A stretch of DNA of 64,000 nucleotides from Sminthopsis crassicaudata. Its lineage: Eukaryota. The notes below the pieces were generated by a model. That model had not been told where the DNA came from and made no database searches. It worked only from the letters and a program-made list of their open reading frames with translations. The DNA lies in NCBI RefSeq assembly GCF_048593235.1, contig NC_133618.1:576370889-576434888 (forward strand), given 5' to 3'. The position numbers and the translations under genes are program-made. This document shows, in pieces, positions 20,861 through 25,879 of this stretch (position 1 is the stretch's first letter; every line of letters starts with the position of its first letter).

Positions 20861-23000
20861 TTTAGTGGTAATGCTTCTATACCTCCCACACCTTTGTGTG
20901 TGTGTGTGTGTGCGCGTCTGTGTATTTTATGCATTCATCCTATACCTTATCCCCCAACTTTTGCTTTTAGTTATTCAGTTCTTGACCATGTTATGCCATG
21001 TGTTGGAATAATGTTTTTTTCTAGATCTTGGAAAGGTGAATTGCAAAAACAGTTTAAAATGTTATATTTGTATAACATTGTTTGTAGCATTTGCATTTTT
21101 GTCTTTTTCCATATACTTTAATCTAGTTTCTAGTAATTCCCAAGGGAAAATATCCCCGGACATTGTCACTTTTTTTTTAATCCTATCTATCCACCCACCT
21201 ATCCTACGCCACTGTATGACCAAGATTATCAGTAAAAGAGACATTTTGGGGTGTAGAAGACATTGGCATTAGAATTCTAGTAGCCTTTTACTGCTTTAGT
21301 ATTAGCTGTTTAACAAGAAGTTAAAAGGAAAACTATCAGCATCCACTCATTAAGAGAAGTTTCTTCACATAGTTCCAGATGTGACTACCAGAAACCTCAG
21401 TGTGCTATGAAGTAGATTATGTCCACATATATGGTGTTTTTTTTTTTTGTTGTTGTTGTTTGTTTGTTTTTTTTCTTCCCTTCTGATTGTGTAACAAAAT
21501 TTAATGGTAGTTGAGTTAGGAGCTGGGGAGATCAGCCCTGAAAAATACTCTTCACACCTTTCAAGCAACTCTGACATTGGATGTGTCAGAATTTGTAGAC
21601 ATCTGCTACACGTTAATCAAAACACACTTCCCAAAGGCAAATTAAGGGATGGCTTAAAAGAAGGACACCATGCAACTGCAGGTTTGTTGTTAAATGAACT
21701 TACTGGTTCCAAATCTCACATATCATTTCTACTAAAATTATAATGTGTTTCAATACTGTAGCAATCAAGAATTTAGGGGCAGGCTACCCAGATAAGTGTT
21801 CAATTAAGAGAAATTGTATATTCTCTGTGATTAAAAGGAGGGCAAGAAATGGCTATTGACAGTGAGCCCCATGGAAATGAGCCTGAACTCAGATTATGGT
21901 TATGTTGCTTTGCTGACTAATGTCTCAGAGAGTTCAGAAAAAGGCAAAGAGACAAACTTGAAATTGAATTTGAACAGATTAATTAGACCTAGAAATAGAA
22001 ACTCTTAAGAAGCAAAACTTGCAGAATGATAATGAAATAAGTCTGAGAATATTGTAATCAAGATTGTCTCCACAAGGAGGCATTTAAACTCAACAGTAGC
22101 AAAGGATGTTAAAACCTTGTGGTTTCCTGTTGACAACTTAAAATAAAAGTCTTTGGGAAAGTAAAAGAAAATACATCTAGAAATGGGAAGTTGTCTCATA
22201 AACCCTTGGCATCCCTTTTTCCACCCTAGAATATCACTAGGAGAGTTTCAGGGTGGGGGGATTCACATTCTCACCCTGGGAGAATAGGGGAAATGATATC
22301 AGAACAAAGTGGTTAATAGTACAAAGGAAAGTTAGACTAAGGAGATTCTGCCTTCTTTGCTTTCAAAGTGCTCTCGAAGAAGACAGAACCTAAATGAAGT
22401 GAAAAATGGCTTAAAAGTGAGAAAGCACAAGTTATTTAACACAACCTCACTTTCAAAATGTTTGATTGCTTACATAGTATTTTCAAAGCCTTTTCATGTG
22501 ATCCAAGTAACTCCTGAGTTAGTGTAGTAGAAAGAGAACACCTGATTCAAATTCTGGCTCAAATAATTTATTGTATAATTTGATGTTTTACTTAATTTCC
22601 CTGAAATTTTCTGTTTGTAAAATGGAAACGGTATAAGTACAGTCACTTCCCACCTTCCAGGCTTATTGTGAGAAAAGCACTTGGACTATTTGAACTGTAC
22701 TGTAGAATTGTCAGGTATTTCCCCCATTTTATAGGGGAGGGAAGAAATCCAAAGGGAGTAACCGATTCATTTGCACAATTAGGACTAAAGCTCACTCTTT
22801 CTGAATGTGACCACAGAGTATTTCCCACTATCTTTAGGCCTCAGTTTTCTACTTTTGATAGGAACTGGATGATCTGTAAAGTCCCTTCCAGGACTAATGT
22901 TCTATGATGAGTCAGAGGCTCTAATTTAAAAAAATTAAAAATAAAAATAAAAAATCCATACCTGAGCAAAGGGAGATAAATAAAAGGACAAAATAAAAGG

Positions 23001-23156
23001 CATTTAGGTGACACAGTGGATAGAGCACCAGCCCTGAAGACAGGAGGACTCGAGTTCAAATCTGGTCTCAGACACTTAACACTTCCTAGCTGTGTGACCC
23101 TGGGCAAGTCACTTAACACTAATTGCTTCAGCAAAAAAAAAAAAAAAAAAAAAAAA
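23001..23156 (+). mobile_element. WSINE1-like SINE inside duplicate copy 1 (counterpart ~30645-30789)
   Basis: TAGGTGACACAGTGGATAGAGCACC...AAGTCACTTAAC followed by poly-A. Confidence 0.85.
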
Positions 23157-23547
23157 GACAAATTAAAACTCATAGTGGCAAAAGGCTCAGAATCTGCAGA
23201 TTTCCATAGTGTTGTGTGGGTATGGTTGTATGGTTGTGGGTGTGTGAAAATGGAGAGATTGTAGAATTAATTCTTGGAACAGATTAATTAAACTGAGGCT
23301 CTATTATAGTATGAGAGTCAGTGCTTTTCCCTTTTTATTTTGTGGACACAGGATCGTAGAAAGCCAGGACACACCTGAATGTGACCACGACTCCCAGGGC
23401 CCCAGTTTCCCTGGACTGTGAACCCTTATAATTTTGTGACACCATCTCCCCACCACTGACTTCCCCTTTACTCTTTTCCTAGTCCCCCACTCACGAGGCT
23501 CCTGGGGGCTCTCTTGGATCTGAGCTATCCTTGGGTCCCCCAGGAAG

Positions 23548-23671
23548 ATGTGGGAGGGGCTTGGGCCCTTCCTTCTGTGCCTCTTTATGGTCTCTTCTGC
23601 CCCCGGACCCCCACCACGAAGAGCGGCCAGAGAGCTGGATGCCACACCAAGGACAACTATCCCTTATGAAG
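23548..23671 (+). pseudogene. SEMA4G: Duplicate copy of the SEMA4G first coding exon (signal peptide), upstream of the SEMA4G promoter; orphan exon or assembly artefact
   Basis: No difference seen from 31181-31304: [41 protein letters not shown]. Acceptor (exon start 23352) and GTGAG donor (23672) are intact. Confidence 0.75.
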
Positions 23672-25879
23672 GTGAGGGTGACCTCATCCCGTTGAGTCTT
23701 GGGGTGTAAGGGCAGGGAGGCTAGGAGAGGAGAAGCTAATCTGGGGTTCTGCCTAAGTCAGGATTCAAGCCTGAGCCTGGCTGCACCATATCAGCTGCTC
23801 ATTGATTTCAACACCTATGGTTAACTTATCCTCAGTCCAAGGCTTTTTCCCCCTCTTTCTGTGTACACCTCCCAAATTTTTTATCTCCATCTTAAGGCCC
23901 TAAATCGGTGGTTTTCTTTGTCCACCGATAAGAGACAATATATTCAGAGGATTTGGTAGAGAAATAATCTGAGGAAAGTGATAGCAATCAAGAGAAGCTT
24001 TTTGGAGGAAGTTGTTTTTAATAACTTATTTCCTATCTAGTGATCAAGCTTGGTTTTGTAATCAAATACAGTAATAGGCCTTATTCTACCTTAGTAGCAA
24101 ACTCAGTATAACTAGGGAAATATTCATTAGTGAATAAAGCAGATTTCCAGATTTCTCTAAATTTAAAAAAAAGAAGAAGAAAGGAAAAAGGCTGAGGTAA
24201 GAAGAGATAAAACAATTTTATTTTATTAAGCAACCATTACATTCCCAGGCATTGTATTAAGCAAGTTACAAGTATTATTTGATTCTCACAACAACCATGT
24301 GCTTTTGCTGTCATTTCCATTTTACAGTTGAGGAAAATGAGACAAGTGACTTGGCCTACAAATCAGATAGATAGTAAGTGTCTGAGGCTGGATTTGAACT
24401 CTAATATTTCTGACTCCAAGCTCATTATCAATCACTTTGGTACCTGGTAAGTGGAGAGCTGAGTTTTGTTGCCCAAACATAGAGCTTTAAGCCTGAACTC
24501 TCAACACAAGTTGCTTTTGCACAAAAAAAATGAACATGAGTCAGTTCATAATTGAGCCAGTCAGCTTAATTTGTATTCTCTTGGGGCTTAATACTTTTGA
24601 TAGATCCTTCAACATCATTGTTAGAATTATTTACAATAACCACAATTTTCCTTTGGGAAATCTCCCCATTTCCTAATGCCATCAAATCTAAACTAGGTTT
24701 AAGGTAACTCATTACAGTCAAAAAAGCACTAGATTTGGAGTTAGAACTTGCAACCAAGAACAAGTCACTTCCCCTTTTTTGAATTCAGTTTCCTAATCTG
24801 TAAAATTGGTGGGGTTAGATAAATGATGTTTATGGTCTTTTAGCTGAAATCTAGAACTGGACATTATCTGACTCTTCCCCCCACTTCCTGTCCAAAATTC
24901 ATTTTCACTTCCTATTTACCATGGCCCTCCAATTAATCATACCCAGTCCAGCCCGTTTTCATTTCTATTTTGCTTTTGTTCATCCAGGAGTGTCCATCTC
25001 TTTCTTTTTTAGGAATCTGCAGGTTTTGGTAAGGGTTAGATGTGTTTGTGGTTTATCCAGAGAAGTAGCATTCCCTTTATGTGTCTAGGAACAGACTTGT
25101 CATCACCTTCAGTTCTGCCTTCCCCACCCTGCAACAATACAATGCTGAGATATGTGGGGTAATTACACATTTTTATTACCAAGGAGGATTGTGGGGGTGG
25201 TATATTGGGAAATGGTTTTTTCAAGGCATAATTAAGTTATTAAATAGGAGAATTTTTTTTTTTAAGTAAGTCTTACCAGGGGAATGGGAAGTTTTCAAGT
25301 CCTTTTTCTTACCAAAGGCTGGTAGGCTTAGATCTACAGATGAACTCATGAACCTGGAAAAGAGAAAACATCGGGAATGTGATCTTAAAAGTATTTTATT
25401 CCTTGCCCCAGGAAATTGAACTCACTTGAGAAAAATTGCAAGAGAGGCAGATTTAGCCTGGAAGAATTACTTAGCAATCAGAGCCAATCAAAAAGTGGAC
25501 TGCCTTGGTGTCTATTGCCCCTTCGTTAGACCTTCAAAGGTTGGGTGTGTCTGAGCAGCTTTTTTTGGAGGACAGATTCTCCAGGGAGGAGATATTTCTG
25601 GTTTTGTGAAAATTAGGACTAGTTAGTGCACAAAGTAACGAGGCCGGGGAAAGGGGTGGAGTCTAGAGGTTCAATAACTAATGAAAATAGTTTAAGAAGT
25701 AGAAGAGGGGAAATTATGATATTTCTAATTCAATCCCCTCTTTCATTCACTGATGCAGAAATTGGGTGAATTGCTTAAGATTTCCCTGGTGGGAAGATCG
25801 AGAAACGGGATGCCAAACTCCAGGCCCTCAGATTGCAAAACCTTGTCAGTAGTTACACTGCATCTGAGCCAATTTTAGT

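What the first reader, a model, noticed from the sequence alone, without database searches (positions are those of the whole stretch)
22831..23924. Near-identical 1.09 kb duplicate carrying the whole SEMA4G start-codon exon, placed upstream of the gene's own promoter
22831-23924 matches 30475-31557 (offset ~7.6 kb, same orientation), differing only in one substitution and poly-A length as far as I can see. It contains a MIR tail, a SINE, the acceptor, the 320-nt exon with ATG and signal peptide, the donor and ~250 nt of intron. It includes intron sequence and has no terminal poly-A or clear TSD, so it is not a retrocopy. The 6.5 kb between the copies is unique, so it is not a simple tandem duplication. 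Copy 2 looks native because its left edge falls in the TSD of a MAR1-like SINE. This is either a very recent DNA-level templated insertion or a misplaced haplotype contig (inference).
Basis: partly seen in the sequence, partly recalled or inferred. Interest (0 to 1): 0.75.

Follow-up and report, generated by a model that had tools for sequence, protein, structure and literature searches.

The report
Recent 1.1-kb copy of SEMA4G start exon
A 1.1-kb piece of a marsupial semaphorin gene, carrying its start-codon exon, is present twice 7.6 kb apart and almost letter-perfect; it is most likely a very young, ordinary DNA-level duplication, but I could not check it against sequencing reads.

Summary
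Window 22831-23924 and 30475-31557 are the same sequence on the same strand. They differ by one substitution (23192 A / 30825 G) and an A-run of 24 versus 13. The flanks are unrelated on all four sides, and it is the only non-SINE repeat in the window.

It is not a retrocopy, a tandem duplication or a gene-conversion patch. The gene is a class-4 semaphorin: Sema, PSI and Ig exons lie downstream, with LZTS2 further on. The only CpG island upstream of its coding exons lies between the two copies.

A profile test shows that the left edge of copy 2 is native. An old SINE, split by a younger SINE, resumes exactly where the unit starts.

The opposite direction therefore stays open.

The window lies on a piece of more than 414 Mb with long-read-like continuity, so a misplaced 1.1-kb haplotig is unlikely.

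My odds:
- Real, copy 1 derived: about 0.5
- Real, copy 2 derived: about 0.15
- Artefact: about 0.2

The parts
22831..23924 (+). Copy 1 of the 1.09-kb unit. It lies upstream of the CpG island and is probably the derived copy.
   Evidence: blunt junctions with 0-1 nt of microhomology, no TSD, no palindrome
30475..31557 (+). Copy 2 of the unit. It lies between the CpG island and the next SEMA4G coding exon.
23925..30474 (.). Unique 6550-nt spacer between the copies. It holds the only CpG island upstream of the coding exons (about 26501-28000).
23483..23671 (+). Start-codon exon in copy 1: ATG at 23548, donor GT at 23672, alternative acceptor giving a start at 23352.
31116..31304 (+). The identical start-codon exon in copy 2: ATG at 31181, donor GT at 31305, alternative start at 30985.
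   Evidence: the region 23340-23700 is letter-identical to 30973-31333
23133..23156 (+). A-run of the SINE inside the unit: 24 A here, 13 A at 30777-30789.
23192..23192 (+). The single substitution: A here, G at 30825.
30290..30474 (+). Younger 5'-truncated SINE (Y). Its 3' end abuts the first base of copy 2.
30259..30286 (+). 5' part of an older core-SINE. It continues into the first bases of the unit once Y and one 7-nt target duplicate are removed.
30464..30475 (+). Left member of a perfect 12-nt direct repeat (ATGATTGATTCT) abutting copy 2.
31576..31587 (+). Right member of the same 12-nt repeat, 18 nt beyond the right edge of copy 2.
31553..31562 (.). Perfect 10-nt palindrome (GTCCA|TGGAC) centred exactly on the right edge of copy 2.
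31560..31570 (-). Imperfect (9 of 11) inverted copy of the 11-nt repeat motif.
32315..38333 (+). Downstream coding exons of the semaphorin gene (Sema, PSI, Ig).

Best explanation
This is a real, very young, DNA-level, non-tandem duplication. About 1.08 kb of the SEMA4G locus was copied and joined into a break 7.6 kb upstream, between 22830 and 23925. The copied piece comprises the end of intron 1, the start-codon exon and about 250 nt of the next intron. Both new junctions are blunt (0-1 nt of microhomology, no target duplication). That pattern fits capture of a copied or free DNA fragment by end joining better than microhomology-primed replication switching. Copy 2 remains the working exon. 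It lies after the only CpG island and 1.1 kb before the next coding exon. Copy 1 lies 2.6 kb upstream of that island and is most likely silent. Shown here: the duplicate, its edges, the gene context, and the native left context of copy 2. Inferred: that it exists in the animal, the direction of copying, the joining mechanism, the age (one change in about 1080 sites, roughly 0.2 million years at a typical mammalian neutral rate), and the silence of copy 1.
For: The unit is near-identical and includes intron and SINE sequence, with sharp edges. Flanks are unrelated and it is the only non-SINE repeat in the window. Copy 1 has no poly-A end, TSD or palindrome. Sema, PSI and Ig exons follow copy 2, and Fez1/LZTS2 lies further on. 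The single upstream CpG island sits between the copies. The old core-SINE is continuous across the younger SINE into the start of copy 2: 9.6-11.2 bits, reached by 2 of 500 shuffles and 7 of 500 random genomic segments. The same test on the left flank of copy 1 gives a random-level 3.6 bits. The window is gap-free for 62.6 kb, lies on a piece longer than 414 Mb, and the species' published assemblies are long-read based. A free-standing 1.1-kb haplotig is hard to produce that way.
Against: No read or second-assembly evidence was obtained. The word shares of the runs (0.90-0.95) fit equally well if the roughly 6% of words specific to copy 1 are all missing. The insertion-like marks sit at copy 2, not copy 1. 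These are a 12-nt flanking direct repeat (empirical rate at most 1.8e-4) and a 10-nt palindrome on the right edge (rate 1.9e-3 per position). The left breakpoint falling exactly at a SINE's 3' end is an unexplained coincidence. The species and assembly identity come from earlier unchecked notes.
Confidence: 0.5

Rival explanations
1. The duplication is real but ran the other way. The unit is native at 22831-23924, and copy 2 plus 18 nt of filler was inserted into the tail of the SINE at 30464-30475. This made a 12-nt target duplication and a fold-back (palindromic) junction of the kind left by polymerase-theta-type end joining.
For: A perfect 12-nt direct repeat flanks copy 2. A 10-nt perfect palindrome is centred on its right edge. 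The filler contains a 9-of-11 inverted copy of the target motif. Copy 1 has no such marks. Short fold-back templated insertions at breaks are documented (PMC11724301, PMC11292364, found). Earlier unchecked notes list other local templated insertions with 8-15-nt target duplications in this genome.
Against: The old core-SINE rejoined across the younger SINE runs into the start of copy 2 (2 of 500 shuffles). The alternative rejoin to the sequence after the right 12-mer gives no hit at all. This reading needs the start exon to have been upstream of the only CpG island, with a 7.6-kb intron in an otherwise compact gene. Including both exon copies in one transcript would give an early stop.
Confidence: 0.15
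2. Assembly artefact: copy 1 does not exist in the animal, or exists only as a mis-built consensus. The two differences would then be heterozygosity plus a homopolymer length error.
For: Differences of this kind (one SNP, one A-run length) are what two haplotypes or noisy long reads give. An earlier unchecked note reports possible homopolymer errors elsewhere in this assembly. No read support could be obtained. The run word shares do not exclude loss of all words specific to copy 1.
Against: No gaps lie next to copy 1; the nearest N run is 38 kb away. A 1.1-kb block is shorter than the reads used by the long-read assemblers described for this species. The block's edges in the source copy coincide with short repeat and palindrome features, which matter to DNA repair and not to assemblers.
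Confidence: 0.2
3. The 6.55-kb spacer, not the unit, is the inserted piece, and the 1.09-kb unit is an unusually long target-site duplication. The spacer ends in a retroelement 3' tail.
For: The spacer's right end is exactly the 3' end of a SINE. That is where a retrotransposed RNA would end.
Against: The old SINE continues from the spacer into the unit, so that junction is native. The spacer carries the gene's only candidate CpG-island promoter. A kilobase-long target duplication would be exceptional.
Confidence: 0.04

Closest known systems
Dispersed (non-tandem) duplications, or kilobase-scale templated insertions at repaired breaks, as catalogued in human germline and cancer structural-variant studies
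   Same: A short segment is copied from a nearby site on the same chromosome, in the same orientation. The donor is left intact and there is no poly-A.
   Different: Typical replication-switch events (FoSTeS/MMBIR, e.g. PMC8421209) show 2-5 nt or more of microhomology at the joints. Here the joints of copy 1 have 0-1 nt.
Polymerase-theta or fold-back templated insertions at double-strand breaks (PMC11724301, PMC11292364)
   Same: The right edge of copy 2 has a perfect palindrome and an inverted copy of adjacent sequence. That is the pattern these pathways leave.
   Different: Those insertions are mostly 5-34 nt, not 1.1 kb. The mark also sits at the copy that other evidence says is native.
False duplications from uncollapsed haplotypes in genome assemblies
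   Same: Two near-identical nearby copies differ by heterozygosity-like changes.
   Different: Such artefacts usually lie at contig ends or next to gaps and involve read-length or longer blocks. This one is 1.1 kb, gap-free, and embedded in unique sequence.
L1-type processed retrocopies and 3' transductions
   Same: A gene fragment has moved to a new site, and one edge lies at a retroelement's 3' end.
   Different: Introns are retained, there is no poly-A end, copy 1 has no target duplication, and the SINE itself was not co-copied.

Membership tests
Dispersed DNA-level duplication / templated insertion | Two near-identical copies that include non-coding and intron sequence | tested here: met
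Dispersed DNA-level duplication / templated insertion | Copies separated by unique sequence, with unrelated flanks | tested here: met
Dispersed DNA-level duplication / templated insertion | Both junctions present in reads of the animal or in independent individuals | not testable with these tools
MMBIR / FoSTeS replication switching | Microhomology of 2 nt or more at the new junctions | tested here: not met
   0-1 nt at 22830|22831 and 23924|23925
Processed retrocopy (LINE-mediated) | Introns removed, 3' poly-A, flanking target duplication | tested here: not met
   Intron and splice sites are kept, there is no terminal poly-A, and copy 1 has no TSD
Tandem duplication | Copies head to tail, or the second copy's flank restarts the unit | tested here: not met
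   6550-nt unique spacer; flanks unrelated
Gene conversion between old duplicates | Decayed homology continuing beyond the identical tract | tested here: not met
   Flank alignments are at shuffle level
Assembly false duplication (haplotig) | Copy bounded by gaps or contig ends | tested here: not met
   The only N runs are at 62614-62749 and 63159-63302
Assembly false duplication (haplotig) | Halved read depth and no junction-spanning reads | not testable with these tools
Helitron-type capture | 5' TC, 3' CTRR, insertion between A and T | tested here: not met
   The left end fits (A|TC) but the right end is ...GTCCA|C
SEMA4G (class-4 semaphorin gene) | Sema, PSI and Ig exons in order downstream of the start exon | tested here: met
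   PF01403, PF01437 and Ig families, searched exon by exon
SEMA4G (class-4 semaphorin gene) | Orthology to SEMA4G rather than another class-4 gene | tested here: inconclusive
   Supported by the LZTS2-type Fez1 exon downstream and by my recollection of the human N-terminus and gene order. No orthology search was run.

The most novel reading that the evidence does not exclude
The duplicate is one instance of a recurrent, still-active process in this marsupial genome that copies nearby DNA, from tens of bases to kilobases, into breaks. The joints are sometimes target duplications and fold-backs. Here the process has moved a complete, splice-competent start-codon exon. That would be exon shuffling at the DNA level caught within roughly the last few hundred thousand years. 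It would also leave two 1.09-kb direct repeats that could delete the gene's CpG-island promoter by unequal recombination.
Probability: 0.1. Interest if true: 0.6.

Novelty: new member of a known kind. Interest (0 to 1): 0.3.

Why it matters
If real, this is a clean, datable example of a small non-tandem duplication that carries a whole first coding exon with its splice sites. That is raw material for exon shuffling or new transcript starts. It also places two 99.9%-identical 1.09-kb direct repeats around the gene's likely promoter, which by inference predisposes to a 7.6-kb promoter deletion. If it is an artefact, it flags a type of error to screen for in this assembly. Either way it is a local structural variant and does not point to a new kind of biology.

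Tried and rejected
**Blocked or empty checks**
- A protein word search with the 79-aa ORF that crosses the left junction found nothing, so it gives no information.
- The run word shares cannot separate the hypotheses.

**Explanations rejected**
- Retrocopy, tandem duplication, gene conversion between old copies and Helitron capture all fail (see the membership rows).
- A circle formed between the 12-nt repeats and then re-inserted would predict about 30 extra bases at the left of copy 1. They are absent.
- A hairpin in the donor that stalls copying is not supported: the fold is -3.5 kcal/mol, z = -0.43.
- An old SINE tail spanning the right edge of copy 2 would make the 12-mer a family feature. 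That alignment is at chance level, 241 of 1000 shuffles.
- My first impression that the left flank of copy 1 continues the SINE into the unit failed the profile test.

**Spliced models**
Exons were searched singly by reference. The only join was a local reading-frame check.

Full report
**The observation.** A repeat search, BLAST and a base-by-base alignment confirm that 22831-23924 and 30475-31557 are the same sequence on the same strand. There are two differences: one A-run of 24 versus 13 (23133-23156 / 30777-30789) and one substitution (23192 A / 30825 G). Similarity ends abruptly at all four edges. I call these J1 (22830|22831), J2 (23924|23925), J3 (30474|30475) and J4 (31557|31558). Flanks of 300 nt are no more alike than shuffled sequence. 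Every other exact repeat of 18 nt or more in the window belongs to a SINE family, so this pair is singular and far beyond chance.

**Gene context.**
- Exons searched one at a time by reference give Sema (35716-36075, 36200-36502), PSI (36889-37086) and Ig (37419-38333), all on the plus strand after copy 2. A Fez1/LZTS2-type exon lies at 56987-57898.
- The open frame at 32315-32662 continues the start exon's peptide in the way I recall for human SEMA4G. That point rests on my own knowledge and was not tested.
- The unit carries an ATG (23548 / 31181), 41 codons plus one base, a GT donor, and two possible acceptors giving an exon of 189 or 320 nt.
- The only CpG island upstream of the coding exons is at about 26.5-28.0 kb, between the two copies.

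**What it is not.**
- It is not a retrocopy: introns and splice sites are kept, there is no terminal poly-A, and copy 1 has no target duplication.
- It is not tandem: the spacer is 6550 nt of unique sequence.
- It is not a conversion patch on an old duplicate: no decayed homology lies outside the unit.
- It is not a Helitron: the 3' end does not fit.

**Which copy is native?** The unit begins with the 3' part of an old core-SINE.
- In copy 2 this is preceded by a younger, 5'-truncated SINE at 30290-30474.
- I built a profile from seven other core-SINE copies in the window.
- I then joined the sequence just upstream of the younger SINE (ending at 30286) to the unit.
- The join scores 9.6-11.2 bits as one continuous element. 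Only 2 of 500 shuffles and 7 of 500 random genomic segments reach that score.
- The pieces alone score about 0-2 bits.
- The left flank of copy 1 joined to the unit scores 3.6 bits, which is random level.
- A join to the sequence beyond copy 2 gives no hit.

J3 is therefore native. Together with the CpG island and the compact exon spacing, this favours copy 1 as the derived copy.

**The complication.** Copy 2, not copy 1, carries insertion-like marks.
- A perfect 12-nt direct repeat lies at 30464-30475 and 31576-31587. Its empirical rate for such flanking pairs in this window is at most 1.8e-4.
- A perfect 10-nt palindrome is centred exactly on J4, at a rate of 1.9e-3 per position.
- A 9-of-11 inverted copy of the same motif lies at 31560-31570.
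- These resemble a target duplication with a fold-back filler, as described for break repair (PMC11724301, PMC11292364).
- I could not explain them as a shared SINE tail, as a stable hairpin, or by a circle model.

By my rough accounting, the coincidences needed under each direction are of similar size. The gene-structure prior therefore decides, and the reverse direction keeps about 0.15.

**Real or artefact?** This could not be tested.
I sent those places and their twin to no search tool afterwards.
- A protein word search with an ORF crossing J1 was empty.
- Runs from two studies of the same organism hold 0.90-0.95 of the sampled words. About 6% of the words are specific to copy 1, so this does not discriminate.
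- Indirect evidence favours a real variant. There are no gaps within 38 kb. The window lies on a piece longer than 414 Mb. Earlier unchecked notes name the genome as the fat-tailed dunnart, and all of its published assemblies are long-read based. That makes a loose 1.1-kb haplotig implausible.
- The A-run length may be unreliable if the assembly is nanopore-based.

**Mechanism and consequences (inferred).**
- The most likely mechanism is capture by end joining of a copied fragment at a break 7.6 kb upstream.
- One change in about 1080 sites suggests an age of roughly 0.2 million years, with wide error.
- Copy 1 is probably silent.
- If a transcript included both exon copies it would hit an early stop.
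- The two direct repeats could mediate deletion of the promoter region.

**Verdict.** This is most likely an ordinary young dispersed duplication, with the direction of copying and its physical reality still to be confirmed.

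Noticed in passing
window 22801-22814 and 23364-23377 / 31008-31021: An identical 14-nt string (CTGAATGTGACCAC) lies 17 nt before the left edge of copy 1 and again inside the unit. The BLAST E-value was about 0.03 in that small comparison, so it could be chance or a shared old SINE variant.
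   Followed up: partly
window 62614-62749 and 63159-63302: The only two N runs (136 and 144 nt) sit inside a TG-rich minisatellite-like array spanning about 62.6-64.0 kb. I left them untouched.
   Followed up: no
window 41500-44211: A CpG island is followed by a 486-aa ATG ORF (42751-44211, plus strand) with no Pfam hit. By gene order it may be the large first exon of the mitochondrial helicase gene next to SEMA4G, but this was not tested.
   Followed up: partly
window 5429-5680, 6651-6905, 8429-8683: Plus-strand open frames look like coding sequence and may be the last exons of the upstream neighbour gene. If so, about 15 kb of intergenic DNA precedes the CpG island.
   Followed up: no
window 50000-52500 and 60000-61000: Two further CpG islands, probably promoters of the LZTS2-type gene and its neighbour.
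   Followed up: no
runs X15-X18: Four small runs of unknown type from the same organism hold 26-31% of the words of 22300-24450. If they are RNA, part of this stretch, or its twin, is transcribed.
   Followed up: no
other windows of this genome: First-stage notes list eight other 'locally templated insertions' of 57 nt to 2.5 kb, several with 8-15-nt target duplications or fold-back joints. None has been followed up. A joint survey would show whether they form one class or an assembly habit.
   Followed up: no
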